IMG/VR virus record: IMGVR_UViG_3300042359_000853 | Location: 124,001-188,000 of that record | Direction: 5' to 3' (one strand) | Length of the DNA: 64,000 bases | Part shown: in pieces, positions 1,487-61,934 of the stretch | How positions within the stretch are numbered: the stretch's first letter is position 1 | How the letters are laid out: each line of letters opens with the position of its first letter | Program-made: the position numbers and the translations under genes | Notes under the pieces: model-generated | Told to the model about the DNA's origin: nothing | The model's database searches: none | What the model saw: only the letters and a program-made list of their open reading frames with translations

Positions 1487-1584
1487 AAAATTTTTAGATT
1501 ATATCTAAAAGTGTTTTTTTGTTCTAAAAATCTATATCTGCCGAGGAGAATAATTTTAATATATAACCTTGATTTTCTAAAAAT

Positions 1585-4269
1585 ATGGCCCATACACCAC
1601 TCTACAAAAGACTTAAAAATCGGGGAACATCATTTTATGCTTTCCCTGGCGCTGCTGAAGATATTTCAGCTTCTTATCAGAATGAAAATTTTAGAATGTA
1701 TTTTTCTAATTATGTTCTATTAAATTTTCCTAAACAAAATCTCTCAGCTGATGGTGCTACTAACAGTATTTATTTCGATTTTGGAACTTTTTCAAAATCA
1801 GAACTTTCTTCACCAGCTGATGATTATAGTGATGGGCTTATAGAATCGTTACGAAACTACGTAGCTAATTTTGAGGTTGTTATGAAGTCTTCGAAGCTTA
1901 ATAATACTGAATTTTATTACGATCATAATGATACAACAACACCCACTGAGAAAATATTCTGGAAATGGTGTAAGAAACTCAATCTATTCGATCTTGAGAT
2001 AGCAAACGATGGAGACGAGTATTTTGGGAATCTTCAAGAGTTTGCAAGAAATAATCTTACTAACGATGAATACTTTAAGGAATATCTTTGGAGAGAAAGA
2101 GAAATTTTTGATTTTGAAACGGTAACCTTCTACCAGACCACCAACCCATCACACACTGGAAAACTTGAAATCGAGATAAAAGGTGCTACAAATCTAAAAG
2201 TAGGAGATATTATAGAATTTATCGAACCATCTAGTTACAGCTCGGGTGATTTAGCTCGTGATTCTGGATTAACTAATCTTCTTACTACACTTTCTAGTGC
2301 AAGATCTAAAGTAGTTTATAAGACTAGTTCGTCTGGTAATGATATTATTATTGTTGATCTATATGTTGCCGCAGCTTTAAATCCGAATCTTTCTTCTACT
2401 ATAAATTTGGTTTATCATCGATTAGTTCAGTATATAGGTAACGTCAATGGTGTAAATAATGTTCAAGAATCTGATAGATCTTATACTGAAGTTTGGGCAC
2501 ATATACCCGATAATACAGGTCAAACACCAGATGTTCTTTTTAGAACCCGTATTGATAAAAATTATAAACCTGGAGTGGGTTTTCCTATTTTACCAGCACA
2601 AATACAAAGTGAAATCGCTGGTGCCGAGAATTTCAAAAATCCTATTGTGAATTCTCCACAAGATTATCCAGGTAGTTATTTCGGTCAATTTGATAATAGT
2701 TTTTATACTTATCAAATATCTACTGGTGATTCACAAAGAAGAAGAGGAGATTTTTTTGGTATATCAGGTGACGTAAATAATTTCTCAGTTAGCTCATCTA
2801 AACTAGATGGTTTATCAATTGACTTTGATAGAGATCACTATGTTAAAATGAATTCTCGTAATCAAGAGATTACAACTTTTGACGAGTTTAATATGCTCAA
2901 TGTCAATGGTAATCCACCAAAAGATTTTGAATTCAACGCCATACTTTGGTATTACGACGTGATAGATTCAAATGGTAATATCTCAAAAAATCTTTACGGT
3001 ATTACTTTTTTGGATAATCCAAATAATAATCCACTACCAAATGAAGTTGGATATCGACTGCCTAGTTTTTCAAAACTTTGTGCCAACTCCAATCAAGATG
3101 GTGTTTCTTATGCGTTCAATCTTATCTTAAACTTTGCCATAACAAATGATAATCCACAAGATGCCTATAATCCTGACGCCATAAATTCTCTTTTTAACTT
3201 TAACCTTTTTAATGAAGCTATGAGAAAGCTTTCTATGGCCAATAAGTCATTTCTACAAATACTTATCGATCAGGGAAAAATTCAAGATGAAATATTAAAT
3301 CTAAAGACCTTACTCTATTCACAAACACAGATAGAAGAGATTAATCAAAAAATTAATTTTTTAGAAAATCTTTTAAGACTTTATTCTTCTAACCAGATTG
3401 TTGGTAGTAACACTATAAGTGTAAGAAGTGTTATTCAGAATGGTAATTCCTATATAACACTTGATTCAATCGATGGTAAATACAACCCAGTTGAAGTAGT
3501 TAGAACTACAGATTTGTTTAATGTTTCAGGACCAGTTTCGTATCTTATCAAACCTTCGCAAAATAAAGATTTTTTATTAAAAGTCATTAACGATGATATT
3601 AATCCACAATTTTTAGGACAAAATATACGTTTGAATTTAACGATTGATAGAGATCTCGATTTTGGTCAAACACTGGATATTATTGTTGATGGCACAGACA
3701 ACGCCACACAAAATAAACAACTTGATATTTTTATAAGAACAGATTCTACACTTACACCTTTAATTCAAGGTCTGAACTTACCTATTTACTACAATATATC
3801 AACCAACACAACAAACACAGCTAAAAAATTCAAAAATTTCAATTTCAATACAAATTTTAATCAAAATGTTCTTCTTTTTTCTGATTATAGTCTTCTGGTT
3901 CCTTTTCAAGAACCAAATAAGTTGATCAAAAAAACGATGAAAGTTGGTGATTATGTTCTTTTTGAGGATTTTGTAGTTGGTTCTGCTTCTACGGTTGATT
4001 TTTCAGGACAATACAGATTATTAAATATTGATTCGAATGATTCGAAAATGTGGTTTGATCTTTCCACAAATCCGGTGGTAACAAATTATGTTTTTGGATC
4101 GGGCGTTAGTTTTCCTATTTGTTTAGACAATTATCTGTGTAATGCTTTTAGTTTAAAATATAATAAAGGATACAAGATTTCTATAACAAGAATAGTCTCT
4201 ACACTCACTGGTAACATTTCAACGGATTATCAGATAATTTCACAAAAGTTTTACGAAGATACAATTTAA
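1585..4269 (+). CDS. Large putative virion structural protein (baseplate/tail-associated)
   Basis: 894 aa, Asn/Ser/Phe-rich beta character, central coiled coil, TTTTAATATATA upstream; no catalytic motifs seen. Confidence 0.5.
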   Translation: MAHTPLYKRLKNRGTSFYAFPGAAEDISASYQNENFRMYFSNYVLLNFPKQNLSADGATNSIYFDFGTFSKSELSSPADDYSDGLIESLRNYVANFEVVMKSSKLNNTEFYYDHNDTTTPTEKIFWKWCKKLNLFDLEIANDGDEYFGNLQEFARNNLTNDEYFKEYLWREREIFDFETVTFYQTTNPSHTGKLEIEIKGATNLKVGDIIEFIEPSSYSSGDLARDSGLTNLLTTLSSARSKVVYKTSSSGNDIIIVDLYVAAALNPNLSSTINLVYHRLVQYIGNVNGVNNVQESDRSYTEVWAHIPDNTGQTPDVLFRTRIDKNYKPGVGFPILPAQIQSEIAGAENFKNPIVNSPQDYPGSYFGQFDNSFYTYQISTGDSQRRRGDFFGISGDVNNFSVSSSKLDGLSIDFDRDHYVKMNSRNQEITTFDEFNMLNVNGNPPKDFEFNAILWYYDVIDSNGNISKNLYGITFLDNPNNNPLPNEVGYRLPSFSKLCANSNQDGVSYAFNLILNFAITNDNPQDAYNPDAINSLFNFNLFNEAMRKLSMANKSFLQILIDQGKIQDEILNLKTLLYSQTQIEEINQKINFLENLLRLYSSNQIVGSNTISVRSVIQNGNSYITLDSIDGKYNPVEVVRTTDLFNVSGPVSYLIKPSQNKDFLLKVINDDINPQFLGQNIRLNLTIDRDLDFGQTLDIIVDGTDNATQNKQLDIFIRTDSTLTPLIQGLNLPIYYNISTNTTNTAKKFKNFNFNTNFNQNVLLFSDYSLLVPFQEPNKLIKKTMKVGDYVLFEDFVVGSASTVDFSGQYRLLNIDSNDSKMWFDLSTNPVVTNYVFGSGVSFPICLDNYLCNAFSLKYNKGYKISITRIVSTLTGNISTDYQIISQKFYEDTI

Positions 4270-4317
4270 ATTAAATAGGATTGAAGATTTAATATATAGA
4301 TTAAAATATATATTTAA

Positions 4318-4740
4318 ATGGCAGTTTGTGAAAATAGTTTATTTGGTGAAGGTAGTAAATATCTAAAATTTCAAGCCGGTGATCTGATCGCTGTTGATGG
4401 TCAAAATACAGTTGAAAGACTAGTATTAAATGATTTAAATTTACCATACAAACAACTTACTAAATTTAAGGTAACTCTAGAGGCAGGACAAGAAGATTAT
4501 CTAGTAGATCAGTTTGATGATAAAACTACTTTTTTTGCTATAGTAGCTAGGTATAATGCCAAATCAAAAGTTGAAGATAAAAACTACCTTCGTTGGAACT
4601 GGATAGATAATTCAAGATCTCAATATTTTTCTAAACTTCTGATGATGCATACAAATTCAGCAAATCCATTTACTGGTATCTATCTTCACAATCCAAATTT
4701 AGACTACGGAGTTAATATAGATATTCTCATAGCTACTTAA
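4318..4740 (+). CDS. Hypothetical, probably structural
   Basis: ORF with late-type motif at 4288-4298. Confidence 0.5.
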   Translation: MAVCENSLFGEGSKYLKFQAGDLIAVDGQNTVERLVLNDLNLPYKQLTKFKVTLEAGQEDYLVDQFDDKTTFFAIVARYNAKSKVEDKNYLRWNWIDNSRSQYFSKLLMMHTNSANPFTGIYLHNPNLDYGVNIDILIAT

Positions 4741-4754: not shown

Positions 4755-5402
4755 ATGACCTACTCATCAAAAATCGGAACCTATTTAGAAGATATCTCGA
4801 TATATCAACTAGAAAATACTTCAAAGAGTTTCAAGATTCTAGACAATTCGGGATCTAAAGTTAGTGCTCAGTTTCCTATATCAACTATAACTAGTGTAGT
4901 GAAGGAGGAATCTTCAGTGTTGGTTTATTCAACTTCAGAAGATTTGAGATTCGATTTTAGTAGCCAGAGTGTTGCAAATCAAGTTTATAGTTTGATTGGT
5001 TGGATTAAGGATGATCCTACAAGAAAAATAACAGATCTAGGAGCGACCTCCTCAAGAGAAGATTCAGAGGCACCTGTAATCTATTTCAATCCGGTTGTAA
5101 AACTAAACAACGTTACAGGAACATGGTCTTCTACCTATTCTGGAACTTTTTCAGCAACTTGGGTATATTCAGATATAATGTCAAAAAGAGATTTAATTAC
5201 CGATCTTGTTAGACAAACTTCAGATAATAGAGATGGTGTATTGACCCTCACAGAATCGAATATTTTTATCTATACCAATTCGACCTATAGTAACTATATT
5301 TCAGGTGTTGGTGCCTATGTTATAACTTTCGATGTATCCGATAGAGCTGGAAATAGTGTTGGACAAGGTCTTACGATAAGTCTAACCGTTACTTCATCTT
5401 AA
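4755..5402 (+). CDS. Protein with C-terminal Ig-like (DUF5011/HYR-like) domain
   Basis: DSEAPVI...DNRDG...GAYVITFDVSDRAGNS pattern. Confidence 0.5.
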   Translation: MTYSSKIGTYLEDISIYQLENTSKSFKILDNSGSKVSAQFPISTITSVVKEESSVLVYSTSEDLRFDFSSQSVANQVYSLIGWIKDDPTRKITDLGATSSREDSEAPVIYFNPVVKLNNVTGTWSSTYSGTFSATWVYSDIMSKRDLITDLVRQTSDNRDGVLTLTESNIFIYTNSTYSNYISGVGAYVITFDVSDRAGNSVGQGLTISLTVTSS

Positions 5403-5406
5403 AAAT

Positions 5407-6330
5407 ATGAATACTATCTATAATTTTAAGAACTGGATTTCAGAATCAAAGTTGATAAACTTTTCACTTTGGGTATCAAACTTAACCGAGAAGGATCCTT
5501 CACTTTTGGATATTATTGATGAATATATCGAGGATAAAGATCCTACAATTGGATTAGAAAATCTTCTAGATACATTGAATAGCAGCCAAAAAGAAAATCT
5601 TCGTAAAAGAATAGAGGATAAACTATCCAAAGATTCACCTAAGCAGGTTACTGCGTCCATTCAGTCTATAGATCCTATTAGGCAAAAAACACTCTTCAAA
5701 CTTTTCGTAAAAACACTATCTTTTATTGATGGTATTGAGGTAGAAAAAAAACCAAAGAGGGATTGGCTTGTTTATTTTACAACAAAAAAGATCTGGAGAG
5801 AAAAGTTATTAAATCTCTCTACTAGAATAACTTCTATCAATCAAGAAGTTGAAAAAATACCAGGAGATCAAAAATGGGTAAAAGCTTTCTGGGGAGTAAA
5901 AAATGACGGACTTTTTTGCTATGGTTTTTATACAAAATCTGAATTTTACCCTATACAAGAGGTAAAATTTACAGGAAATTTTTCTAGGTATATATCTTCG
6001 TTGGGTGCTAAAATACTCTGGGAAATAAAAAGAGATTTTATGGAGGTCACTCCCCAAAACCTACTTCTTCTTGGAAAAATTAAAACTTCAGTTGATGGGT
6101 TTGATTTTCCAAGTAGTGATAAGTTTTCTCTATGGGAGAAGCACCTTTTACATTTCGGTTGGTATGGACTAGGTGTTTGGAGTAGTAGAGAAATCGACCC
6201 TTCTTCATTTGAGAAAATAAAGGAAGAAATAAAGGAAAAATTGAGAAGTTATAGGTGGTCGAATAAGGTAAAGATCTCACTTAGAGCCGAAGAGTTTTGG
6301 ATACATCTTTACATTCAGATTAAACAATAA
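5407..6330 (+). CDS. Hypothetical protein with N-terminal capsid-targeting-like motif
   Basis: Begins MNTIYNFKNWISES. Confidence 0.55.
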   Translation: MNTIYNFKNWISESKLINFSLWVSNLTEKDPSLLDIIDEYIEDKDPTIGLENLLDTLNSSQKENLRKRIEDKLSKDSPKQVTASIQSIDPIRQKTLFKLFVKTLSFIDGIEVEKKPKRDWLVYFTTKKIWREKLLNLSTRITSINQEVEKIPGDQKWVKAFWGVKNDGLFCYGFYTKSEFYPIQEVKFTGNFSRYISSLGAKILWEIKRDFMEVTPQNLLLLGKIKTSVDGFDFPSSDKFSLWEKHLLHFGWYGLGVWSSREIDPSSFEKIKEEIKEKLRSYRWSNKVKISLRAEEFWIHLYIQIKQ

Positions 6331-6348
6331 CTTATTTTCCCATACAAG

Positions 6349-7122
6349 ATGATTATGGAACTAGTTCGTCTTATCAAAAGTCTTGTAAGAGGTAATAAAG
6401 ATCTAGATTTAGGTCAATTACCCTCCCGTGGTTTGTTTTATCCTGAAGATTTCTCGATTAAAATCAAAAGAGCATCTTCAGAGCAGATCGTTCACTATGA
6501 AACCAATTTCGTAGAAAAAGATATGTTTTCTATTATTGAGTCTATTAAACGTGTAGTAGAAGCAAACGCTGTTTTTCCAGAAAATTATAATTTCAGATAC
6601 CTTAAAGTTATTGATCTTATCTGGGTATTTTTGGAAATTGTTAAATTTACACAGGATAAAAAAATAAACATCAACTATTTTGATAGTGATTCGTCACTTG
6701 TAAAGGAAGTTGAGATCTCTAATGAAAGTTTCAACTACTTTAATTTTTCAAAATTTGAGAGTTTTTACAACGCTGAAGAAAAAATCTTCGAGATGCAGGG
6801 TTACCGATTTTCGTTACCTTCTATTGGCGTTGAATCAGATTTACTTAAATATCTTAACTCGAAAAGTGCAAAAAAATCCGGAAGAGATCTAACAGATATG
6901 AACTACAACTTCATTTTCTTTCTGGGTATGAAAGATAGTATTACAAAAAAAGAAATAGAAAATCTAATTACTATTTTCAATGATGATTTAGATAAAAAAG
7001 AGATGGAAAAAATCGAAGCAATTATCGAAGAGTTTTCCAAGTCTATTAAATATACCTTGAAAATAGGTAAAAAAGTAATCGATCTTCAGTCAAAGATTCA
7101 ACTCAAAGAAATATTCAGATGA
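6349..7122 (+). CDS. Putative baseplate hub assembly protein (T4 gp26/gp51-like)
   Basis: LPSRGLFYP motif near N-terminus and later FSLPSIG; size fits. Confidence 0.45.
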   Translation: MIMELVRLIKSLVRGNKDLDLGQLPSRGLFYPEDFSIKIKRASSEQIVHYETNFVEKDMFSIIESIKRVVEANAVFPENYNFRYLKVIDLIWVFLEIVKFTQDKKININYFDSDSSLVKEVEISNESFNYFNFSKFESFYNAEEKIFEMQGYRFSLPSIGVESDLLKYLNSKSAKKSGRDLTDMNYNFIFFLGMKDSITKKEIENLITIFNDDLDKKEMEKIEAIIEEFSKSIKYTLKIGKKVIDLQSKIQLKEIFR

Positions 7123-7182
7123 ACTATATAAATAAAATTAGAAAAGGCGGTTGAAGTTTTTTCTAATTTTATATATATCTTA

Positions 7183-17058: not shown

Positions 17059-17074
17059 AGTTCGTTTTTTTTTA

Positions 17075-17106
17075 CAAAGATAAGAAGATTTTTGGTAGAA
17101 AACAAA
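17075..17106 (-). promoter_or_regulatory. Bacteroidota primary-sigma promoter TTTG-N20-TATCTTTG
   Basis: Both elements with canonical spacing upstream of the MoxR gene. Confidence 0.75.
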
Positions 17107-17124
17107 TATTTAATGAAAATATTT

Positions 17125-17487: not shown

Positions 17488-17493
17488 GATTTT

Positions 17494-23196: not shown

Positions 23197-23230
23197 AAGA
23201 GTATATATTAAAAAAAGAAATACATTTCTT

Positions 23231-25338: not shown

Positions 25339-25385
25339 AGTAGGGGGTGTGGTTGTTTATATATATTTCTAAAAAAAGTTTAATC

Positions 25386-26483: not shown

Positions 26484-26509
26484 AAATCTAGGTTTTTATA
26501 TATACCCCT

Positions 26510-34814: not shown

Positions 34815-34844
34815 GACTTATTGTTTTTTTGGTATATATAAAAT

Positions 34845-37592: not shown

Positions 37593-37661
37593 ATAAAAGG
37601 ATTGTTCGTAATTTAAGAATATTGGATTTAATATCTAGTTATTTTTATATATAGGATTTAT

Positions 37662-40452: not shown

Positions 40453-40536
40453 ATTTCTAAAGTTTTTTTTAGTTATATATTAAAGTTTTTTTTTCTCTAT
40501 TCCTAACATTTTCATAAAAAATATTATAATTAGATT

Positions 40537-44778: not shown

Positions 44779-44831
44779 ATCTGTATGTATATATATATTT
44801 TTTGAAAAATAGTAATTTTATATATAAACAA

Positions 44832-45518
44832 ATGATTACTACAAAAGATTTAGAAACAACATTCAAGGAAATATTCGAAACTGAAAAGGGGTTAGTTCAA
44901 TCCATAGAAACTGTATTCGAATTATCAAGGGATAAAAGTTTTTACAAACTCGTAATTTCTATACATGGACTTTCTATCGAAGATACACTTATTATTCATA
45001 CTAAATTTATCTTCAAAACAAATTTAGAAAAAAACAAATTAATCGAAAACTCGTTTATCTATCTCTACGATATAAATTGTGAATATCACAAAGTAGATTT
45101 TAGAAATATTATTGATCTTAGAAAAAAGATAGAAGATATTATTGAATCAAATGAGTTCGGAACAGATCTTCAAATACTCTCTGATTTTATCGAGGCACCA
45201 TCGATGTTCTTGAACTATTATCTTAAAAGAGCTAGAATAACAAACTACTCAATTTATGATGTTAAATATGATCCGAAATTTAAGACACTACCTTGTAGTC
45301 AAATAACATTTGATTTCAAGATAAATGTTAATAACGCTTATGATATTTCAGTTTCTATTCAGAAAAAAGAAAAAGAAGAGGTTGATGATATAGTGAGGTA
45401 TAAATTCAGATTTCAATTTTTAGATAAAATCTTTAATAGAGAAACCGACACACTAACAAACATTCACTTTTTTATTGGATCAAATATAGCAAAAACGCTC
45501 GATAAAATGATTAAATAA
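44832..45518 (+). CDS. Conserved hypothetical (probable start ATG 44832)
   Basis: Late motif at 44816-44826 directly upstream. Confidence 0.6.
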   Translation: MITTKDLETTFKEIFETEKGLVQSIETVFELSRDKSFYKLVISIHGLSIEDTLIIHTKFIFKTNLEKNKLIENSFIYLYDINCEYHKVDFRNIIDLRKKIEDIIESNEFGTDLQILSDFIEAPSMFLNYYLKRARITNYSIYDVKYDPKFKTLPCSQITFDFKINVNNAYDISVSIQKKEKEEVDDIVRYKFRFQFLDKIFNRETDTLTNIHFFIGSNIAKTLDKMIK

Positions 45519-45550
45519 TTTATATATACATAAAAATAAAAACTTCTACT

Positions 45551-46282: not shown

Positions 46283-46285
46283 GAT

Positions 46286-48720: not shown

Positions 48721-48750
48721 AAAAAAACCCAACTCTTCTGGAGTTGGGTT
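48721..48750 (-). terminator. Intrinsic terminator after tmRNA
   Basis: Minus strand AACCCAACTC-CAGAA-GAGTTGGGTTTTTTT. Confidence 0.9.
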
Positions 48751-48753
48751 ACT

Positions 48754-49103
48754 TGGTGGAGGTGCTGGGATTCGAACCCAGGTTTCTACATTTACCTAAA
48801 TAATCAATCATTCACAAGCTTAGAACTCTTTTCTAAGAGAACCAACTATCGGATTTTATCGAAGAACCTTCCGAAAAAACTTTTGAGGCTATTTATAGAG
48901 TTACCTCATTCTCGGAAACGTCTAGGCTACGGCCAATCTGTTTGCCTTTAGGATGTTGTTGCGTAGGGCGAATACTAAGTCTTCAACGCTTCCTACTTCA
49001 TTCGTGTTGCCACTTAAAGTTTTCATACAACTTATGAATCGGTGAGTATGATCCGATGCTTGCTTGATTACCCGAATAAATGAGTCAAAAGCCATTCACC
49101 CCC
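48754..49103 (-). ncRNA. ssrA: tmRNA
   Basis: 5' GGGGGTGAATGGCTTTTGAC, 3' GGGTTCGAATCCCAGCACCTCCACCA; 7-bp acceptor stem with G3.U wobble and encoded CCA; internal tag ORF 48922-49011 ending LAVA*. Confidence 0.93.
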
Positions 49104-49110
49104 GAGTGTT

Positions 49111-49123
49111 GATATATATAAAA
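49111..49123 (-). promoter_or_regulatory. Representative phage late-type promoter motif TTT(T/A)ATATATA
   Basis: Sits about 8 nt upstream of the tmRNA 5' end; about 20 further copies upstream of genes in the window. Confidence 0.65.
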
Positions 49124-51605: not shown

Positions 51606-51630
51606 ACAGGGTATATATTATTTTCAAAAC

Positions 51631-51960: not shown

Positions 51961-52005
51961 TAAACAATCGGTTTTTAATATATATATAAAATTTAAAGGA
52001 ATAAA

Positions 52006-53322
52006 ATGTCAAAATTAGTAAACTTGAACACAATCAGTGATTCAGACCAAATCGATAAGATCTTGGATTCTGATCTGATGATATTTGAAGATGTTCAAGG
52101 ATCAAAAATATTAGTTCAATGGGATGGTGAAAAATTCACGATAAAACCAAAATCTTTATCTTCAGAACCTATCAACCTAGTTGATTTAGCTATGCAGAAC
52201 TATTATAACGCGGCTTTTGACTACCTTAATTCGTTAGATAAAAGAGTGAAAACATTACTCAATAAAAAGTGGTGGTATGTTTTTGAGTATTTCTCTGATA
52301 ATCAACCTGCTAATATAGCTTACACAAGAACCCCAAAAAACGGATTAGTTCTAACATCCATCATTAAAGGTCGTGATTATAACTATACTATCGAGGAGCT
52401 TGATGAATATTCCAGACTTTTCAATGTTGATCCTCTGCCGATTATTTTTCGGGGAAGACTTTCACAAAAAACAAGAGAAGCTATTAAATATTTTCTCAAC
52501 ACCTCTGAGAAAGATTTAGAATATGTTTTTGGTGAAAAATCTTTTGCTTTTTTCTTTTACAAAATACTTAACCCTAACACACAAAACTCTTTTCTGATGG
52601 AAGATGAGTTTCAAAATAATCTAGAAAAACTGATTATTAAAACACCAGATACCGAAACAACATTTGCTATCTTAAATCCACTCTATAAAAAAATATCTGA
52701 TAATGGATCTACTGAATTTGTTGAAGTATATACTCTTATTTTAGTTAACTTTTTGAGTTTTTGTCAATCCGTGGATCTGAAACGTATAAAGTTGGATGCC
52801 ACCAATCGTGAAGAAGCCTATATTAGCCTAATATGTAAACTATTTAATGTGTATATGACCGAGGTTAAATCTGATGTTTTAGATTTTGAGTTTACGATAC
52901 CTCATTTTTTCAATAAAGATAAGTTTAAAATAAATCGTGAGCTTATTTCTGATGTAGCTACAAAGAATATTATCTCACAAGATCCGAAAATAGAATATAT
53001 CTTCAAAGTGGTCCTGGGATCATTCAACAGAAAAAAGAAAAAACCGATTGGTGTTTTTAATAATAATACCTTAAATCTTTTCAATAATTTTGTAGATACT
53101 TTAGAAGCTCGTGTTGATGAGTATCTTAACAAAAAATCAGAAATAGAACTCACCAAAAAGGGTCTTCTAGATTTTAGTGATTATTTTGATATTAAATATG
53201 ATACTGATTCACAAGGTCAAGTTTATCCAGATGTCTATAAAGAGTTTGAGAAGGGAGCTGATGAGAAATCTAAAAAAGATAAATCACCAAAAGGATTCTC
53301 AATTCCAGAAAAAAAACCTTGA
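52006..53322 (+). CDS. RNA-ligase (Rnl2-like) fold protein lacking catalytic lysines
   Basis: IFEDVQGS at motif I position, VFEYF (III), PIIFRG, EKLIIK (IV), FAILNP (V). Confidence 0.5.
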   Translation: MSKLVNLNTISDSDQIDKILDSDLMIFEDVQGSKILVQWDGEKFTIKPKSLSSEPINLVDLAMQNYYNAAFDYLNSLDKRVKTLLNKKWWYVFEYFSDNQPANIAYTRTPKNGLVLTSIIKGRDYNYTIEELDEYSRLFNVDPLPIIFRGRLSQKTREAIKYFLNTSEKDLEYVFGEKSFAFFFYKILNPNTQNSFLMEDEFQNNLEKLIIKTPDTETTFAILNPLYKKISDNGSTEFVEVYTLILVNFLSFCQSVDLKRIKLDATNREEAYISLICKLFNVYMTEVKSDVLDFEFTIPHFFNKDKFKINRELISDVATKNIISQDPKIEYIFKVVLGSFNRKKKKPIGVFNNNTLNLFNNFVDTLEARVDEYLNKKSEIELTKKGLLDFSDYFDIKYDTDSQGQVYPDVYKEFEKGADEKSKKDKSPKGFSIPEKKP

Positions 53323-53345: not shown

Positions 53346-53444
53346 CTATTAGGTATTATAAATAATTATATTTTTTATAGTAAAATATAGAAAAAAAGTT
53401 GAAAAAATACTACTTTACAGATTTATATTTTAATATATAGATCT

Positions 53445-54014
53445 ATGAAATATAAAGTAAGTGAATATGCTAAATTGAAAAACGTTACCTACCGAACCGT
53501 TTGGAACTGGATAAAATCAAATAAGATAGACTATCAAACTACAAACACCGGTGGTCTGGTTATAGTTGAAGAAGATCCCAATTCAAATAAAGAGGTAGCA
53601 GTTTATGCTCGTGTTTCTTCATCAGAGAATAAAGATAATCTAGAAAGACAGAAAAATAGATTATTGGACTATTGTGCTTCTAGAGGATATAAAGTTTCTA
53701 GTATAGTAACAGAGATTGGATCTGGATTGAACGATAAAAGACCAAAATTAGAAAAAATTCTAACAAATAGATCTATAAGTATAATTGTAGTTGAACATCG
53801 GGATAGATTATCAAGATTTGGATTTAATTATATAGAAAAACTATTAAATTCAAATGATAGAAGGATAGAGGTAATAAATGAGCCTCTTAATGAAAAAGAA
53901 GATTTAATACAAGACTTTGTATCTATAATTACTAGTTTTACCGCTAGATTGTATGGACAAAGAAGAAGTAAAAGAAGAACCGAATTTCTTATAAAAAATC
54001 TACAAAGTGAATGA
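53445..54014 (+). CDS. tnpA: IS607 transposase (MerR-like HTH + serine recombinase)
   Basis: VTYRTVWNW; VYARVSS..LERQ; EIGSGLN; EHRDRLSRFG; ARLYG. Confidence 0.95.
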   Translation: MKYKVSEYAKLKNVTYRTVWNWIKSNKIDYQTTNTGGLVIVEEDPNSNKEVAVYARVSSSENKDNLERQKNRLLDYCASRGYKVSSIVTEIGSGLNDKRPKLEKILTNRSISIIVVEHRDRLSRFGFNYIEKLLNSNDRRIEVINEPLNEKEDLIQDFVSIITSFTARLYGQRRSKRRTEFLIKNLQSE

Positions 54015-55180
54015 TCCTAGTTGAAAAGCACATAATTAGATCAGGTAAATATTTCAATCAACTAATGGAAGTTACTAGATTGAGTAAAAATCTTTATAAT
54101 TCTGGTTTGTATGCTGTGAGGCAGCACTATTTTGAATACAAGAAGTTCTTAAATTATGTAAATCTTAATAATATGTTTGTTGAACAGAAACAACAAGATT
54201 ATTACAAACTACCAGCAAAGGTTAGCCAACAAACACTGAAAATGGTGGAACAAAATTTCAAATCATTTTTTGGATTACTAAAATCTGAAAAAACTAAAAA
54301 GGTAAAAATACCTAAATATCTGGATAAAAATTCCAGTTTTTTAACAATTTGGACAAATCAAGCAGTTTCTCTCAAAAAGAAGGGTTACTTAAAGCTATCA
54401 GGAACTGATGTCTATATCAAAACAGATATTGATCATATCAATCAAGTTAGAGTTGTTCCTAGAAATAATGAGTTAGTAGTAGAGATATTATATGAAGTCC
54501 GGGAAAATGATTTAAAGAAAGATAACGGAAAATATTCATCTATAGATCTTGGCATCAATAATCTCATGACTTTATCGGGAAACACAACAAAACCTATTAT
54601 AGTCAATGGGAAACCACTAAAATCTATTAATCAGTATTACAACAAGAAAAAATCCGAAATTCAGGGTAAATTAGAAACAATCAACAAAACAAAAAAGAGC
54701 AAAAAATTAAATAAACTAACAAACAAAAGAAACAACAAAATAAATGATTATCTACACAAATCAAGTAAAATAATTATCAATCATTTAGTTTCCAAAGATA
54801 TATGTACTTTAATAGTTGGATACAATCAATACTGGAAACAAGAGATAAATATTGGAAAAAAGAATAATCAGAATTTTGTTTCAATTCCCTATCTAAAATT
54901 ATTAAATATGTTAGAATACAAATGTAAAAAAGAAGGCATTAACTTTGTCAAAAACGAGGAGAGTTATACATCCAAGTGCTCGTTTATAGATGGTGAGGAA
55001 ATTAAAAAACATACAAAATATTTAGGTAAAAGAATAAAAAGAGGATTATTCGAGAGCGCGTCTGGTAAATTGATAAATGCGGATTTGAATGGATCTCTAA
55101 ATATTCTCAAAAAAGTAGTTGGGGAATTTCAGTACCCAATAGAGGTGTGTAGCACGCCAAAAGTTATTAATTTAGCTTAG
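54011..55180 (+). CDS. tnpB: TnpB RNA-guided endonuclease
   Basis: SKNLYN, SIDLGINN (RuvC-I), DYLHKSS, EESYTSKC, NADLNGSLNI (RuvC-III). Confidence 0.95.
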   Translation: MILVEKHIIRSGKYFNQLMEVTRLSKNLYNSGLYAVRQHYFEYKKFLNYVNLNNMFVEQKQQDYYKLPAKVSQQTLKMVEQNFKSFFGLLKSEKTKKVKIPKYLDKNSSFLTIWTNQAVSLKKKGYLKLSGTDVYIKTDIDHINQVRVVPRNNELVVEILYEVRENDLKKDNGKYSSIDLGINNLMTLSGNTTKPIIVNGKPLKSINQYYNKKKSEIQGKLETINKTKKSKKLNKLTNKRNNKINDYLHKSSKIIINHLVSKDICTLIVGYNQYWKQEINIGKKNNQNFVSIPYLKLLNMLEYKCKKEGINFVKNEESYTSKCSFIDGEEIKKHTKYLGKRIKRGLFESASGKLINADLNGSLNILKKVVGEFQYPIEVCSTPKVINLA

Positions 55181-56374: not shown

Positions 56375-56398
56375 TCTTCTTTTTTAATATATACCTTC

Positions 56399-57786: not shown

Positions 57787-57791
57787 CTATT

Positions 57792-58883
57792 ATGAAAATT
57801 ATAGACACTTTTTTAGAGCTGACCTCTCAAACTTATCCACACGGTCACGAACGGGAACTTGAACGATTTTTACCGAAAGGTATTTGTATCGATGAGTTTG
57901 GAAACTATTTTATGTATGTTGGAGATAAAACAACTACGACAATGTTTACTTGTCACTTAGATACCGCATCGTATGAAAAATCAAGAGTAACACATGTTAT
58001 TCGTGATGATAAAATTTTTACCGATGGTCGAACCATTCTCGGAGCTGACGATAAATCTGGTATGACTATCCTTCTTTGGATGATTCATAAAGGTGTTCAA
58101 GGTCTTTATTATTTTTTTCTAGGTGAAGAAAGAGGTTGTGTTGGTTCGGGAAAACTTAAAAGAGTATTTACCGAAATGTATCCACTGATTACGAAAATAA
58201 TTTCTTTCGATAGACGAGGCACACACTCGGTGATTACACACCAATCTTACGGAAGAACAGCCTCAGACGAGTTCGCTAGAGATCTATCAAGGCGACTAAA
58301 CGAAACCGGTTATGGTTTTAGGTATGAGCCGGATCCCACGGGTATTTACACCGATTCCAATCAGTTTGCCTCGATAGTTCCAGAATGCACAAATATTTCA
58401 GTAGGTTACCGAGACGAGCACTCAACTTATGAATCTCAAATTATTTCACACCTTGAAAATCTTTGCTACGCAGTTACTCAAATTGATTGGGAATCAGTAG
58501 TAGTAGCTAGAGACCCTAAGGTAAAAGATAGTGGTTGGGGATACGACTATGGATATTGGGGGAGGAGCCAAAGCTATACTGAACGAGATGAATGGTTCGA
58601 TGATTACTTTAGTCAATCGGATAGTTCTACCTATTCTCACGGGAAAACTTACTATGACGGAATAACGATAGACGAATTCGGTGATCCCGTTGATAGTAAT
58701 GACGAAATTTCACTTGAAGATATTAAGATGGTCCTCGATAAAATGGAAGTCGAATACCAAAAAATCCACTGGAATGGTGAAGAATGTTATGTTGAAATTG
58801 ATGGTTCTATGCAGTATTTTGCCGATAGAGAAAACTTAGTTGATTTTATCGATTATTATCAACACTTCTCTAACCAAGAATAA
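57792..58883 (+). CDS. M28/M20-like zinc hydrolase, copy 2
   Basis: YPHGHE, FTCHLDT, LGADDKSG, GEERG, SFDRR, YTDS, PECTNISVGY..EH. Confidence 0.85.
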   Translation: MKIIDTFLELTSQTYPHGHERELERFLPKGICIDEFGNYFMYVGDKTTTTMFTCHLDTASYEKSRVTHVIRDDKIFTDGRTILGADDKSGMTILLWMIHKGVQGLYYFFLGEERGCVGSGKLKRVFTEMYPLITKIISFDRRGTHSVITHQSYGRTASDEFARDLSRRLNETGYGFRYEPDPTGIYTDSNQFASIVPECTNISVGYRDEHSTYESQIISHLENLCYAVTQIDWESVVVARDPKVKDSGWGYDYGYWGRSQSYTERDEWFDDYFSQSDSSTYSHGKTYYDGITIDEFGDPVDSNDEISLEDIKMVLDKMEVEYQKIHWNGEECYVEIDGSMQYFADRENLVDFIDYYQHFSNQE

Positions 58884-59055: not shown

Positions 59056-59107
59056 AGTGGTTTTTTATTTTTTCTGGGAATAATCCTTTTCATATATATA
59101 AAAATAT

Positions 59108-59479
59108 ATGATCATCACAAAAGAAATACGGGTAAAAATTACCGAGCAAAATATAAATCACTTTGAGAATCTCGGATATGAAACAGCACTGGGAGAAGAA
59201 ATATCCATACCGGTTGAACTACTTACTTCGGGAAGTCATCATAGAATTCGTTGTAAGTGTGATAGTTGTGGTATAGAAAAAGATGTTATTTACAAGAACT
59301 ATATCAAATACGATAATAACTGGGGAGAATATAAGTGTAGAAAGTGCTCTGAGTCAAAAAGAAAAGAATCACTAAAGAAATCTTTAGGTGTTGAATATCC
59401 AATACAAAACATTGAGATAAAAAAAAGAATATTATCTCGTTCAAGTGGCACGAAAGTCACTTCTAAACAACTAGATTAA
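59108..59479 (+). CDS. Zinc-ribbon protein resembling a homing-endonuclease DNA-binding N-terminus
   Basis: CDSC, CRKC, GVEYPIQNIEIKKRI. Confidence 0.65.
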   Translation: MIITKEIRVKITEQNINHFENLGYETALGEEISIPVELLTSGSHHRIRCKCDSCGIEKDVIYKNYIKYDNNWGEYKCRKCSESKRKESLKKSLGVEYPIQNIEIKKRILSRSSGTKVTSKQLD

Positions 59480-61182
59480 AACTCAAACTCTGTTCCGGGC
59501 TCTGGTGGAGTCTCAGTTCCACCTTGTGCTGGTGGTCCTTGTGCTGGTGGTCCTTGTGCTGGTGGCTCCTCTGTACCTGGTTCTGCTGGTGGCGTCTCTG
59601 CACCGGGTTCAGTAGCTCCACCCTCGGGAACACCACCCATATCCGGTGTTGCTTCTGATGAACCTTCTACTTTTTTATTTAACCAATATCTTTCATTTTC
59701 ATTTCTTTCTTCTTGAGAAAGACCATAGATATGTTCCATAAGATAATCAATATGGAAATAAGTTCTATCGTCTTTCATAAGAGAAAGAAGATTAGTAACA
59801 ATAGATACTTTTTTATCCATATTTGACAGCTTTCTCCAATTCTCAAAAATTTGATTTACATTAAAAACAATATCACACTCATTTAAGAAAACTTCATCAT
59901 CTTTGAGCTCGGGAAACTCCATACACATCTGAAGTCTTATGGGCTTAACGATGAGTTCTTTATAGATTGCACGAAGACGACCGATAAAATTTCCAAATAC
60001 AACTTCATCACGAGTCATCGAAGATATTTCTTCATAAATAGTTCCACCACCAGAGGTTTCATCAAATCTCTGAAAAGGAATTTTAGAAGCTGATTGAAGA
60101 GCTTTCTTAAAGTATCCAAGAATAACATCCTCGTTTAAGTTGTGACCTTGGGGTTGTTTAATTTCCATGGTAGGAGTTCCAGCATCACTATCAGGAAACC
60201 AATATTGTTTGTTGTAGGGTAGATGTTTCGATCCACTAATCTGAAGAGTTCCTAGTGTATCATCCCATTCAACTTCTTCAGAGTAGTCAGAAATAAGTTG
60301 ACCGATTTGCTCCTCTGCTCTTTGACGAGGAAGACCTTTCACAGGAATCGTAAATTGTTGATAAAGTGTAGCATTGATAACATTGAACATTATTCTTGCT
60401 TGTTCAATAACTTTCAACTGGTTGTAAGGCTTGATAAGACCCTCAAGATAAGAAATCTCTGTGTAGTCGTTTTGTGTTGAATAAGAGATGAAGATTATCT
60501 GTGAATCAAGAAAAATTCTTCTTAGTTGTGGATCTTCGGGAAATTGAATCCAAAGATTTCCAATATTTGGTTCATAAGCTGGAACTAATGTTTCCGGCTT
60601 TAATCTGTTGAAATGAACAACGTTTTGTTTTTTATCATCCCAAACAATTTCCATGGCTATGTAACCATCTATCAAAAAATCTTTCATTAGATTGAAAGCT
60701 GTTATGCCATCATTAAATCCGTATTTGTTATATATTTTCTCGAAAAACTCTTGATATTTATCTCTAATTTCTTGTGAATACGAGGCGGATATGTTTTTTG
60801 GTGTACAAAAATCTTTCTCACTATAAATAATTGCCTCTTCGGCTACTCTTGAAACATAATCTCTCAGGTAATCTTTGATCGAATATTCACGAAGTATTCT
60901 TCTTTTATCAATATAAGCTCTATCAAGATAAGGTATTGATTTTTTGTTTAATACACTAGCAACTGCTCTTTGTGAGAAAAAATCATAATACGATCCATCT
61001 TTTTGAGAATATGGATCCTCATTCATATTTACACCCACGGTGTTTCTTAAGATCATATCGTCGTATTTCATACCCCATGAACTCAAATTTCTTAAAAGTC
61101 GTGAGAAAAGACCACGATTTTCGACTGATGAACTCATTATCAGTCCAGAGCCTTCTCTATTTTGAGGATTGTATGATGCCAT
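59476..61182 (-). CDS. Portal protein (T4 gp20-like)
   Basis: FLIDG, SYLE..IKPYNQL..IE, YWFP, YFKKALQSASKIPFQRF, TRDEVVF..FI.RLR. Confidence 0.9.
   Translation of the reverse strand: MASYNPQNREGSGLIMSSSVENRGLFSRLLRNLSSWGMKYDDMILRNTVGVNMNEDPYSQKDGSYYDFFSQRAVASVLNKKSIPYLDRAYIDKRRILREYSIKDYLRDYVSRVAEEAIIYSEKDFCTPKNISASYSQEIRDKYQEFFEKIYNKYGFNDGITAFNLMKDFLIDGYIAMEIVWDDKKQNVVHFNRLKPETLVPAYEPNIGNLWIQFPEDPQLRRIFLDSQIIFISYSTQNDYTEISYLEGLIKPYNQLKVIEQARIMFNVINATLYQQFTIPVKGLPRQRAEEQIGQLISDYSEEVEWDDTLGTLQISGSKHLPYNKQYWFPDSDAGTPTMEIKQPQGHNLNEDVILGYFKKALQSASKIPFQRFDETSGGGTIYEEISSMTRDEVVFGNFIGRLRAIYKELIVKPIRLQMCMEFPELKDDEVFLNECDIVFNVNQIFENWRKLSNMDKKVSIVTNLLSLMKDDRTYFHIDYLMEHIYGLSQEERNENERYWLNKKVEGSSEATPDMGGVPEGGATEPGAETPPAEPGTEEPPAQGPPAQGPPAQGGTETPPEPGTEFEF
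59522..59565. repeat. 15-bp tandem repeat x3 (PPAQG) in portal C-terminal tail
   Basis: CCTTGTGCTGGTGGT repeated. Confidence 0.9.
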
Positions 61183-61222
61183 TAAAACTTTTAATCTTTA
61201 TTTTTATATATTAAAATTTTGG

Positions 61223-61915
61223 TTATTGGTTGAACTTTTCTAAGTTTCTCTGGATTCTATCGTATCTTTCTTTTAACTCAACTGGAGTAAAGTTCTTACC
61301 CTCGGCTTCTTTATAGAGCTGCTCAAGAGATAACCTTTTCATTTCTGCGTCTCTTTGTTGTTGTTTATCTTTCTTGGCGAGCATAATCTCGTATAATTTT
61401 TTTGGATCATATTTATTGATAGGGTGACCAGCGTATAGAAATCTTGGAACTAGATTGGTATTGATTCTGTGAGATTGAGTGAGCTGTGCCATATTATACT
61501 CCATGAGGCTATATTCAAATCCTATTTGTAAAAGTTTATTGTAGATGCCTTGAAAATCGACCGGTAGATCACGATTTTTTGTAAAATCATCCTCTATCAT
61601 ATAATCATCAAATATTCTCGCACGAAACTCTAGTGGTATAAAATTCAAGTTCAGAGCTAGTATAACAATTTTATTCTCAAATTTCTTGAACTCTACCGTA
61701 AATACCGGTGAATAACTCATCCAATTAGATTCATCTCGATAATGAAAAAAATAAAAACCACCGAAACTAATCTCACGAAAGGGAATGTTCTGGACCTCTT
61801 TATCACTACCTCGATATTTATTATAAAAAAATACAGAATTATTTTTATAGGCATCTGCGGTAGATACCTTTTTTAGATTATTATCTGATTGAACTTTATC
61901 TAGAAGAATTCCCAT
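61223..61915 (-). CDS. DNA end protector-like protein (T4 gp2-like); probable start ATG 61915
   Basis: GGFYFFHY..YSPVF..ALNLNFIP..R; divergent from gp4-like gene. Confidence 0.6.
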   Translation of the reverse strand: MGILLDKVQSDNNLKKVSTADAYKNNSVFFYNKYRGSDKEVQNIPFREISFGGFYFFHYRDESNWMSYSPVFTVEFKKFENKIVILALNLNFIPLEFRARIFDDYMIEDDFTKNRDLPVDFQGIYNKLLQIGFEYSLMEYNMAQLTQSHRINTNLVPRFLYAGHPINKYDPKKLYEIMLAKKDKQQQRDAEMKRLSLEQLYKEAEGKNFTPVELKERYDRIQRNLEKFNQ

Positions 61916-61934
61916 TTCTTCTATATATAAAGAT

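What the first reader, a model, noticed from the sequence alone, without database searches (positions are those of the whole stretch)
1554..61932. Recurrent TTT(T/A)ATATATA late-promoter motif, a variant of T4 TATAAATA
The motif lies about 5-35 nt upstream of starts at 1554, 4288, 7167, 23202(-), 25356, 26493, 34833, 37642, 40474(-), 44788/44816, 45519, 49111(-), 51612(-), 51972, 53428, 56381, 59092, 61205(-) and 61922. These include the tail tube, portal, fiber, gp2/gp4 and tmRNA genes. The TATATA core is palindromic and often sits between divergent genes, so one element may fire both ways. By inference it is recognised by a gp55-like sigma with altered specificity.
Basis: partly seen in the sequence, partly recalled or inferred. 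Interest (0 to 1): 0.6.

Follow-up and report, generated by a model that had tools for sequence, protein, structure and literature searches.

The report
Variant T4-type promoter, huge phage
A short TATATATA-type sequence just ahead of about a third of the genes of this giant freshwater phage is very probably the promoter read by the phage's own T4-gp55-like sigma factor; it differs from the classic T4 late promoter by one base and often seems to start the message right at the start codon.

Summary
TTTWATATATA occurs 16 times in the window (0.48 expected) and 38 times in the 227.6-kb contig, 37 of them in the 4.5% that is intergenic. The informative core is WATATATA. It points at the downstream gene (27 sense versus 2 antisense in tandem spacers), is nearly absent from convergent spacers, has no -35 partner, and also precedes a tmRNA gene. 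The contig is a fragment of a Mahaphage-like huge phage. No RNA polymerase gene was found in it or in its complete relatives, but it encodes a 121-aa homologue of T4 gp55. Across gp55-encoding phages the start-proximal motif is ATA-N-ATA: N is A in T4, Xoo-sp13 and RsoM2USA, C in PAU and PTm1, and T in this clade. N falls at T4 promoter position -9, a base that gp55 flips into a pocket. Motif-to-ATG spacing is bimodal (4-5 nt, or 16 nt and more, almost nothing between). This places the start site about 5-6 nt downstream, as in T4, and implies many leaderless mRNAs. All seven identifiable virion genes carry the motif. The clamp loader, SSB and both sigma genes do not. Late timing, start sites and sigma assignment remain inferred. 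Verdict: a new variant of a known kind.

The parts
1555..1565 (+). exact 11-mer, 19 nt before ATG 1585 (894-aa ORF, no family match)
4288..4312 (+). exact 11-mer (4288-4298) plus a second core (4305-4312) 5 nt before ATG 4318
7167..7177 (+). exact 11-mer, 5 nt before ATG 7183 (1309-aa virion structural protein, phrog_8510)
23202..23212 (-). exact 11-mer, 5 nt before ATG 23196; heads the long minus-strand gene run 23196 to 11109
25355..25365 (+). GTTTATATATA variant with palindromic core 25358-25365; 19 nt from ATG 25338 (-) and 20 nt from an in-frame GTG at 25386 (+)
26494..26504 (+). exact 11-mer, 5 nt before GTG 26510
34833..34843 (-). exact 11-mer 18 nt before ATG 34814 (-); its palindromic core 34833-34840 also lies 4 nt before ATG 34845 (+, topoisomerase II large subunit)
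37643..37653 (+). exact 11-mer, 8 nt before ATG 37662
40474..40484 (-). exact 11-mer, 21 nt before ATG 40452
44788..44795 (-). core only (AATATATATATA context), 9 nt before ATG 44778
44816..44826 (+). exact 11-mer, 5 nt before ATG 44832
45518..45528 (+). ATTTATATATA variant, 22 nt before ATG 45551
49113..49123 (-). exact 11-mer, 9 nt before the mature 5' end of the tmRNA
48754..49103 (-). tmRNA gene: a non-coding unit driven by the motif
48726..48750 (-). intrinsic-terminator-like hairpin (10-bp stem plus T run) closing the tmRNA unit
51612..51619 (-). core AATATATA (AATAATATATA context), 6 nt before ATG 51605
51974..51991 (.). two overlapping opposed 11-mers (51974-51984 +, 51981-51991 -) between divergent genes 51631-51960 (-) and 52006-53322 (+)
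53429..53439 (+). exact 11-mer, 5 nt before ATG 53445 (IS607-like serine recombinase TnpA)
56383..56393 (+). exact 11-mer, 5 nt before ATG 56399
59093..59103 (-). exact 11-mer 37 nt before ATG 59055 (-); its palindromic core lies 7 nt before ATG 59108 (+)
61205..61215 (-). exact 11-mer, 22 nt before ATG 61182 (portal protein)
61922..61929 (.). single palindromic core in a 19-nt divergent spacer: 5 nt before ATG 61935 (+, gp4-like head closure) and 6 nt before ATG 61915 (-)

Best explanation
WATATATA, usually preceded by one to three T, is the -10-like promoter element of this huge phage. I infer that host RNA polymerase core carrying the phage's 121-aa gp55-like sigma recognises it; this sigma has a region-2 domain only. 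By analogy with T4 the element occupies -13 to -6, and transcription starts at an A 5-6 nt downstream. It differs from the T4 late promoter TATAAATA only at -9 (T instead of A). That change makes the TATATATA form of the core (45 of the contig's 103 sites) a perfect palindrome. About a quarter of promoter-proximal genes in this clade have the ATG exactly at the predicted start site, giving leaderless mRNAs. The rest have leaders of about 10 nt or more that are A-rich and lack a Shine-Dalgarno sequence. Shown here: enrichment, orientation, absence of a -35 element, conservation across relatives, presence of a gp55 homologue, no RNA polymerase gene detected, and the spacing distribution. Inferred: which sigma reads the motif, the exact start site, late timing, and leaderless translation.
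For: Enrichment and orientation. No conserved base upstream of the short T run, hence no -35 element; sigma-70-type sites are not enriched (82 found versus 89.9 +/- 10.5 in shuffles). Conservation: in 80 IMG/VR loci whose gp55-like protein is 79-99% identical, WATATATA lies within 60 nt upstream, in sense, of 711 of 1469 genes, against 45 for TATAAATA. It is not a translation signal: it precedes the tmRNA gene here and in 6 diverged relatives at 9-23 nt. The tmRNA unit ends in a terminator and sits at about 311x depth in a metatranscriptome, against about 4x for the gene upstream. gp55 homologue. No RNAP beta or T7-type RNAP in the contig, and no RNAP beta in complete relatives LR756502, LR756504, LR756501, LR756500 and PAU. 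This agrees with Iyer et al. 2021, PMC7824862. Cross-lineage pattern ATA-N-ATA: the same pipeline recovers ATAAATA for T4 (15 of 28 occurrences lie near a start, others 0.2 or less), ATAAATA for Xoo-sp13 (12/13), ATACATA for PAU (15/21) and PTm1 (17/36), and ATATATA for this contig (111/177, against 27/160 for ATAAATA) and for LR756502 and LR756504. N maps to T4 -9, one of three bases that gp55 flips into pockets (Shi et al. 2021, PMC7892883). Spacing: of 871 sites in 75 relatives, 221 lie 4-5 nt before the ATG, 22 at 9-15 nt and 481 at 16-37 nt. Control AT-rich 8-mers show neither the peak nor the gap. Positions 5-7 after the core are 65-72% A in leadered sites, against 41% background. Gene classes: major capsid protein, prohead protease, two neck proteins, portal, head closure and a virion protein all carry the core within 25 nt (7 of 7, against 83 of 247 overall). 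The clamp loader, SSB-like, gp55-like and second-sigma genes lack it. Seven genes without the core carry a Bacteroidota-type TTTG-N17-21-TAnnTTTG instead, against 1.5 expected.
Against: There is no start-site mapping. The only RNA data are assembled contigs without end resolution. Timing is unknown because the phage is uncultured. The motif also heads units with topoisomerase II, DNA methyltransferase, exonuclease and an IS607-like transposase, so it may not be strictly late. No gp33 (phrog_254), gp45 (phrog_223, PF02916) or beta-clamp (PF00712) homologue was detected in the contig or in complete relatives. The gp55-like protein lacks the T4 C-terminal helix-loop-helix and clamp-binding tail, so the T4 activation mechanism is not established. 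A second phage sigma factor exists. The T4 pocket residues N13, Y97 and T99 are conserved, and H95 is F in both A-type and T-type phages, so no residue yet explains the -9 change. Some 5-nt sites precede GTG starts (26510), which are poor for leaderless translation.
Confidence: 0.75

Rival explanations
1. It is a promoter read by the gp55-like sigma, but it is not late-specific. It would be the general phage promoter for everything after the host-sigma-dependent early genes (middle plus late).
For: The core precedes about a third of all genes (83 of 247). These include operons with topoisomerase II, methyltransferases, an exonuclease, a transposase and the tmRNA. No third promoter class was found.
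Against: All 7 recognisable virion genes have it, while the clamp loader, SSB-like gene and both sigma genes do not. In T4, too, some non-structural genes lie behind late promoters (established knowledge of T4, not tested here).
Confidence: 0.3
2. The motif is a promoter, but it is read by another sigma: the second phage-encoded sigma (206 aa, with a Sigma70_r2 match; region 4 was not tested) or the host housekeeping sigma used as an extended -10.
For: A second sigma gene exists at contig 85972-86592 (Sigma70_r2 E 4e-17, phrog_1740). TATATA resembles TATAAT.
Against: There is no -35 element and no TG extension at the motif. Sigma-70-type two-hexamer sites are not enriched. The likely host phylum uses TAnnTTTG, which appears upstream of a different gene set. 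The one factor shared by all phages with an ATA-N-ATA start-proximal motif examined here is the gp55 homologue.
Confidence: 0.1
3. It is not a promoter but an AT-rich translation-initiation or spacer element that accumulates before start codons in a genome without Shine-Dalgarno sequences.
For: At 4-5 nt spacing it sits where a ribosome-binding site would be. The leaders are A-rich and lack Shine-Dalgarno sequences.
Against: It precedes a non-coding tmRNA gene in seven lineages. The spacing is bimodal with an empty 9-15 nt zone, and the second mode extends to 37 nt. Other AT-rich 8-mers do not behave this way. Internal genes of tight operons lack it. It often follows terminator-like hairpins directly.
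Confidence: 0.04

Closest known systems
Bacteriophage T4 late promoter TATAAATA with gp55 / gp33 / gp45
   Same: An 8-bp -10-like element with no -35 element. A region-2-only sigma of the gp55 family is encoded by the phage. Host RNA polymerase is used. The inferred start lies 5-6 nt after the element. It precedes head, neck and portal genes.
   Different: Position -9 is T, not A, and the first base is A or T, which makes the TATATATA form of the core palindromic. The sigma is 121 aa against 185 aa and lacks the helix-loop-helix and clamp-binding tail of gp55. No gp33 or gp45 homologue was found. Many sites are spaced for leaderless mRNAs, whereas the T4 control region has none closer than 12 nt.
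ATAAATA-type predicted late motifs of other gp55-encoding jumbo phages (CBB/GAP32 in PMC5259590; Xoo-sp13 and RsoM2USA here)
   Same: They were found the same way, upstream of structural genes in jumbo phages with a gp55-like sigma and no detectable gp33 or gp45.
   Different: Those phages keep the T4 base (A) at -9. This clade has T, and PAU and PTm1 have C.
Leaderless 'TA-led' genes: a -10-like signal about 10-12 nt before the start codon (Zheng et al. 2011, PMC3160421)
   Same: The same logic and geometry apply: a -10-like element at a fixed short distance from the ATG implies a missing 5' UTR.
   Different: Here the signal belongs to a phage sigma, not the host housekeeping sigma. It also coexists with a leadered class that uses the same element.
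Bidirectional bacterial promoters that arise from symmetry of the -10 element
   Same: One symmetric AT-rich -10 element could open in either direction. There are 13 divergent spacers with a single shared core.
   Different: The element here is a perfect 8-bp palindrome read by a gp55-type sigma. In two cases both divergent ATGs lie 5-7 nt from it.

Membership tests
T4-type late transcription (gp55-dependent promoters) | Phage encodes a gp55-family sigma (region-2 homology domain only) | tested here: met
   Contig 220946-221311 matches phrog_234 at E 5.9e-8 / 1.1e-7. A family profile hits PDB 7d7c_F gp55 at E 1.7e-9. The AF2 model has pLDDT 82 and its best fold hit is 7d7c_F at TMq 0.75.
T4-type late transcription (gp55-dependent promoters) | Promoter is a single -10-like octamer with no conserved -35 element | tested here: met
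   Position-specific counts over 108 own sites and 597 sites in relatives show information only in the octamer, a short T run before it and A at +5 to +7 after it.
T4-type late transcription (gp55-dependent promoters) | Consensus TATAAATA | tested here: not met
   Consensus is WATATATA. ATAAATA is at background near starts (27/160 against 111/177 for ATATATA).
T4-type late transcription (gp55-dependent promoters) | Co-activator gp33 | tested here: inconclusive
   phrog_254 gives no match in the contig, LR756502, LR756504, LR756501 or PAU. gp33 is small and fast-evolving, and Iyer et al. 2021 report gp33 orthologues in this phage group.
T4-type late transcription (gp55-dependent promoters) | Sliding clamp gp45 as mobile activator, with a clamp-binding tail on the sigma | tested here: inconclusive
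   phrog_223, PF02916 and PF00712 give no match, although a clamp-loader homologue is present. The T4 C-terminal tail is absent and is replaced by a different conserved, disordered tail. No other ORF of the contig shares that tail.
T4-type late transcription (gp55-dependent promoters) | Transcription starts about 6 nt after the octamer | not testable with these tools
   Only indirect support exists: the 4-5 nt spacing peak, the empty 9-15 nt zone and the A preference at +5 to +7. The RNA contigs lack end resolution.
T4-type late transcription (gp55-dependent promoters) | Active late, after replication starts, on virion genes | not testable with these tools
   Gene-class association only: 7 of 7 virion genes with the core and 4 of 4 replication or sigma genes without it, but several DNA-metabolism genes lie behind it.
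Leaderless mRNAs | Transcript 5' end coincides with the start codon | not testable with these tools
   Inferred from promoter-to-ATG geometry, following the approach of PMC3160421. In relatives 221 of 871 sites lie at 4-5 nt.

The most novel reading that the evidence does not exclude
gp55-type sigmas have been retuned at a single promoter base (-9): A in T4-like and Xanthomonas/Ralstonia jumbo phages, C in PAU and PTm1, T in the Mahaphage-like huge phages. The T version creates a perfect 8-bp palindrome. These phages would exploit it for truly bidirectional promoters and for mass production of leaderless mRNAs (about a quarter of promoter-proximal genes) in hosts that lack Shine-Dalgarno-based initiation.
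Probability: 0.4. Interest if true: 0.65.

Novelty: new variant of a known kind. Interest (0 to 1): 0.5.

Why it matters
Huge phages of 0.5-0.7 Mb are known only from metagenomes, and their gene regulation is essentially unannotated. A validated promoter motif would let transcription units be drawn directly on hundreds of such contigs. It would separate a host-sigma 'early' gene set from a phage-sigma set and improve start-codon calling, since many true starts lie exactly 4-5 nt after the core. The A/T/C variation at one flipped base offers a natural series for working out how a minimal sigma reads the non-template strand. The spacing pattern suggests that leaderless translation is a major expression mode for a phage clade, which has not, to my knowledge, been described. 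Papers matching the searched terms did not describe this motif.

Tried and rejected
- **Nucleotide search:** a megablast of 20 kb against GenBank phages gave nothing. Relatives were reached only through proteins.
- **T4 gp55 as a single query:** it found nothing in the contig. Only the family profile did.
- **phrog_12791:** this other late-sigma family gave no match.
- **Start-site mapping:** the one RNA run that holds the locus is kept as assembled contigs.
- **Tail tube, sheath and fibre names:** PHROGs and Pfam found nothing for 1585-4269, 4318-4740, 4755-7122 or 52006-53322. ORF 4318-4740 has only two relatives, both identical to it, in IMG/VR, so it was not folded.
- **A residue code for the -9 base:** T4 H95 is F in A-, T- and C-type phages alike, and N13 is mostly kept. 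The only covarying position is the neighbour of H95: P in A-type phages, A or L in T- and C-type phages. That rests on 13 sequences and has exceptions (pT24 unclear), so it is a lead and not a result.
- **Widening the sample:** PAU and PTm1 sigmas found only themselves in IMG/VR. A mixed alignment was too diverse to seed a scan.
- **Lak-B4, pT24 and MA9V-2:** none gave a clear preferred base. For ORF calling in the Lak-B4 locus only, TAG was read as sense, because standard-code coding density was 0.66 against 0.85. No alternative code was applied to the window.
- **A shared C-terminal tail as a clue to a gp33-like partner:** no other ORF in the contig ends like the gp55-like protein.
- **Not used:** the large protein searches, as the question did not need them.


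Full report
**What the window is**

The 64-kb window is bases 124001-188000 of a 227,583-bp linear IMG/VR contig with 33.5% GC. CheckV rates the contig 39% complete. A simple longest-ORF call gives about 247 genes covering 95.5% of the DNA under the standard code.

The portal protein (59476-61182, minus strand) is 67-70% identical to that of two 'uncultured phage' genomes of 635-642 kb, LR745206 and LR756502. It is 47-48% identical to those of LR756504 and the 735-kb LR756501/3. More distant relatives are the Prevotella Lak megaphages, Sphingomonas phage PAU and Tenacibaculum phage PTm1. The contig is therefore a fragment of a Mahaphage-like huge phage.

Its DNA is found in lake-water metagenomes of 20 studies. 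The host is not known. Three things point to Bacteroidota as an inference: the relatives with known hosts, the A-rich leaders without Shine-Dalgarno sequences, and a TTTG-N17-21-TAnnTTTG motif (below).

Yes.
- TTTWATATATA has 16 exact matches in the window, against 0.48 expected.
- In the whole contig 37 of 38 exact matches fall in the 4.5% of sequence that is intergenic (24% GC).
- Markov models of order 1-3 trained on that same intergenic DNA give 0.45, 3.1 and 4.8 matches on average and never more than 13.
- An unbiased 8-mer count in the 60 nt upstream of all genes puts AATATATA (46 genes, 58 occurrences in the contig) and TATATATA (48 genes) at the top by enrichment.
- The octamer occupies 103 positions in the contig, 88 of them intergenic (p about 1e-101).

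**It behaves as a directional, start-associated signal**

- In spacers between same-strand genes the asymmetric form AATATATA is 27 times in sense and 2 times in antisense (p 1.6e-6). The 11-mer is 14 to 1.
- The core is present in 26 of 33 divergent spacers but only 1 of 9 convergent spacers.
- Aligned sites carry information only in three places: the octamer, a short T run before it (T at -1 in 60%) and an A preference 5-7 nt after it. There is no -35-like block.
- A sigma-70-type two-hexamer scan finds fewer sites than in shuffles (82 against 89.9).
- Genes that lack the motif are mostly internal members of tightly packed runs. For example, the 12-kb minus-strand run from 23196 to 11109 is headed by the site at 23202-23212.

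**It is a transcription signal, not a translation signal**

The motif lies 9 nt upstream of the mature 5' end of a tmRNA gene (48754-49103, minus strand). A strong terminator-like hairpin (48726-48750) follows the gene.

In a freshwater metatranscriptome the tmRNA sits at about 311x word depth. The protein gene immediately upstream sits at about 4x, and the high-depth contigs do not extend past 49099. This fits a separate unit starting between 49103 and 49139, although RNA stability and RNase P processing could contribute.

In six diverged relatives found through the neighbouring peptidase gene, a tmRNA gene is again preceded by one or two copies of the motif, at 9-23 nt.

**Conservation**

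In 80 IMG/VR loci (1.14 Mb) whose gp55-like protein is 79-99% identical to this one, WATATATA lies within 60 nt upstream, in sense, of 711 of 1469 genes. TATAAATA does so for 45.

**Which polymerase and sigma?**

- No RNAP beta subunit (PF00562) and no T7-type RNAP (PF00940) were found in the contig.
- No beta subunit was found in the complete genomes LR756502, LR756504, LR756501, LR756500 and PAU.
- This agrees with the 'group 2' jumbo phages of Iyer et al. 2021, which lack RNAP and carry a minimal and a fuller sigma (PMC7824862).

The contig encodes both sigmas.
- **The gp55-like sigma.** A 121-aa ORF at contig 220946-221311 matches the T4 gp55 family (phrog_234, E 5.9e-8 and 1.1e-7).
  - A profile built from it and 12 relatives hits T4 gp55 in PDB 7d7c as its best match (E 1.7e-9).
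  - An AlphaFold model (pLDDT 82, four helices, disordered last 14 residues) has 7d7c_F as its top fold match (TMq 0.75), followed by sigma region-2 domains.
  - Homologues are present in all the relatives named above, and the Xoo-sp13 homologue is annotated as a late sigma.
- **The second sigma.** A 206-aa ORF at contig 85972-86592 has a clear Sigma70_r2 match.

**The cross-lineage pattern**

For each genome I counted how many oriented occurrences of ATA-N-ATA are followed within 45 nt by an ATG that opens an ORF of 60 aa or more.

| Genome | Preferred motif | Near a start / total | Comparison |
|---|---|---|---|
| T4 structural region (control) | ATAAATA | 15/28 | other three bases 0.2 or less |
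| Xoo-sp13 | ATAAATA | 12/13 | |
| RsoM2USA | ATAAATA | 7/14 | |
| PAU | ATACATA | 15/21 | 3/19 for A |
| PTm1 | ATACATA | 17/36 | 13/81 for A |
| This contig | ATATATA | 111/177 | A 27/160, C 6/52, G 8/94 |
| LR756502 | ATATATA | 34/61 | |
| LR756504 | ATATATA | 15/21 | |
| LR756501 | ATATATA | 12/40 | weaker |
| LR756500 | ATATATA | 11/32 | weaker |
| 12 LR756501-like IMG/VR loci | ATATATA | 66/231 | |

An independent 7-mer enrichment ranking gives the same top motifs. Lak-B4, pT24 and MA9V-2 were not decisive.

In the T4 open complex TATAAATA spans -13 to -6. gp55 flips the non-template bases at -12, -9 and -8 into pockets (Y97; N13 and H95; T99) (Shi et al. 2021, PMC7892883). The variable N is exactly position -9, which sits in the shallow pocket.

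In the alignment Y97 and T99 are kept, N13 is mostly kept, and H95 is F in all non-T4 proteins whatever their motif. Residue 94 is P in A-type phages and A or L in T- and C-type phages. With 13 sequences this is only a lead.

The gp55 homologue is the only factor shared by all phages that show an ATA-N-ATA motif. For that reason I assign the motif to it rather than to the 206-aa sigma.

**Geometry and leaderless mRNAs**

The distance from the end of the octamer to the start codon is sharply bimodal.
- In the contig there are 17 sites at 5 nt and 4 at 4 nt, against a broad group at 16-30 nt.
- In 75 relatives (871 sites) 221 lie at 4-5 nt, 22 at 9-15 nt and 481 at 16-37 nt.
- Six control AT-rich 8-mers show neither the peak nor the gap.

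If the octamer occupies -13 to -6 as in T4, position +1 is the sixth base after it. With a 5-nt spacer that base is the A of the ATG. In leadered sites the 5th to 7th bases are 65-72% A, against 41% background.

The empty zone corresponds to 5' UTRs of about 3-9 nt. Such leaders are too long for leaderless initiation and too short for leadered initiation. This is the reasoning used for 'TA-led' leaderless genes by Zheng et al. 2011 (PMC3160421).

The T4 control has no site closer than 12 nt. Xoo-sp13, RsoM2USA, PAU and PTm1 have almost none, so the leaderless class is a feature of this subclade. It remains an inference, and a few 5-nt sites precede GTG codons.

**Is it 'late'?**

Every recognisable virion gene has the core 4-25 nt upstream:
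- the major capsid protein (contig 188039-189697),
- the prohead protease/scaffold protein,
- two neck proteins,
- the portal,
- the gp4-like head closure protein,
- a 1309-aa virion protein.

That is 7 of 7, against 83 of 247 genes overall (chance about 5e-4). The capsid and protease promoters follow terminator-like hairpins directly.

The clamp loader, an SSB-like gene, the gp55-like gene and the 206-aa sigma gene lack the core.

Seven genes carry the Bacteroidota housekeeping pattern TTTG-N17-21-TAnnTTTG within 120 nt upstream (1.5 expected, p 5e-4), and none of them has the core. They include the clamp loader and the gene heading the 206-aa sigma operon. This looks like an early (host sigma) versus later (phage sigma) split.

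However, motif-headed units also contain both topoisomerase II subunits, DNA methyltransferases, an exonuclease, peptidases and an IS607-like transposase. 'Late' is therefore plausible but not shown. 'Post-early' is the safer word.

**Bidirectionality**

TATATATA is its own reverse complement; 45 of the 103 core positions have this form. In 13 of 33 divergent spacers a single palindromic core is the nearest core to both genes. In 5 more there are two separate or overlapping cores.

The clearest cases:
- window 61916-61934, a 19-nt spacer with the core 5 nt from ATG 61935 (head closure) and 6 nt from ATG 61915;
- contig 27174-27193, a 20-nt spacer with distances of 7 and 5 nt;
- window 34815-34844, with distances of 4 and 18 nt.

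At 51974-51991 the two opposed 11-mers overlap but use cores offset by 2 nt.

**What does not fit the T4 model**

- No gp33 (phrog_254), gp45 (phrog_223, PF02916) or beta clamp (PF00712) was detected in the contig or in complete relatives. A clamp-loader homologue is present.
- The gp55-like proteins of this clade are short (121-134 aa) and lack the C-terminal helix-loop-helix and clamp-binding tail of T4 gp55.
- They end instead in their own conserved tail, which is predicted to be disordered. No other ORF of the contig shares that tail.
- Whether transcription is coupled to replication through a clamp is therefore open.

**Literature and novelty**

- Full-text searches found no paper that combines TATATATA with late promoter and phage.
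- Searches on megaphages or huge phages with promoter terms returned three papers. Only Iyer et al. was read, and none was seen to describe this motif.
- ATAAATA-type late motifs have been predicted for other gp55-encoding jumbo phages such as CBB and GAP32, which also lack detectable gp33 and gp45 (PMC5259590).
- The finding is thus a new variant of a known kind: the same class of promoter and sigma, one changed base, and two consequences (palindromy and leaderless spacing) that I did not find described.

**Limits of this work**

Gene calls are my own longest-ORF calls with a simple start correction. Distances depend on them, although the ATG-based analysis does not use the calls. All evidence for function is comparative and statistical.

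Noticed in passing
window 48726-49123 (-): A complete stand-alone tmRNA unit: motif, 350-nt tmRNA with a 29-aa tag ending in LAVA, then a 10-bp-stem terminator. It is the only part of the 6-kb stretch examined that is deep in a freshwater metatranscriptome (about 311x against about 4x). Relatives keep a tmRNA next to the same peptidase gene.
   Followed up: partly
window 53429-55180 (+): An IS607-like pair: serine-recombinase TnpA at 53445-54014 and a TnpB-like gene at 54011-55180. The phage motif sits exactly 5 nt before the TnpA ATG, so a mobile element appears to be wired into the phage's own promoter system. Chryseobacterium phage MA9V-2 also carries a TnpB inside its split DNA polymerase region.
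   Followed up: no
window 15871-18084 (-), 23740-24885 (-), 27405-29216 (+); contig 85742, 217693: A Bacteroidota-type housekeeping promoter pattern, TTTG-N17-21-TAnnTTTG, lies upstream of 7 genes (1.5 expected). None of them has the WATATATA core. They include the clamp loader and the gene heading the second-sigma operon. These are candidate early promoters and a clue to the host phylum.
   Followed up: partly
contig 85972-86592 (outside the window): A second phage-encoded sigma factor (206 aa, Sigma70_r2 E 4e-17, phrog_1740). Its promoter class, perhaps a middle class, was not identified.
   Followed up: no
contig 220946-221311 and relatives (L006-L009, L013-L092): The gp55-like proteins of this clade end in a conserved tail of about 10 residues that is predicted to be disordered (S-N-D/E-G-x-G-hydrophobic-H/Y-S/N-hydrophobic). 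PAU, PTm1 and pT24 have a different conserved tail. Either could be a docking peptide for an unidentified clamp or co-activator. A conserved ~430-aa ORF of unknown function always lies directly upstream of the sigma gene.
   Followed up: partly
contig 189698-189780 and 191902-191990 (just past the window end): The major capsid and prohead protease genes are each preceded by a terminator-like hairpin with a T run that abuts the AATATATA core. The averaged upstream profile of 597 sites shows the same A-rich / G-rich / T-rich footprint.
   Followed up: partly
window 62430-63947 (-), 20951-22231 (-); contig 44856-46622, 191980-193686: Several homing or HNH endonuclease genes. Three are paralogues 41-48% identical to PTm1 ORF-303, which also sits next to the capsid gene in PTm1. 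Two of them have the motif upstream.
   Followed up: no
window 49441-51099 (-) and 57792-58883 (+): Two paralogous peptidase genes (phrog_4191). The family is widespread in IMG/VR huge-phage contigs (188 relatives found).
   Followed up: no
window 25347, 26510, 44802, 61960: The longest-ORF starts (GTG or TTG) run over or abut the motif. The likely true starts lie downstream of it: 25386 GTG, 44832 ATG, 61915 ATG. The motif can therefore serve as a start-codon corrector in this clade.
   Followed up: partly
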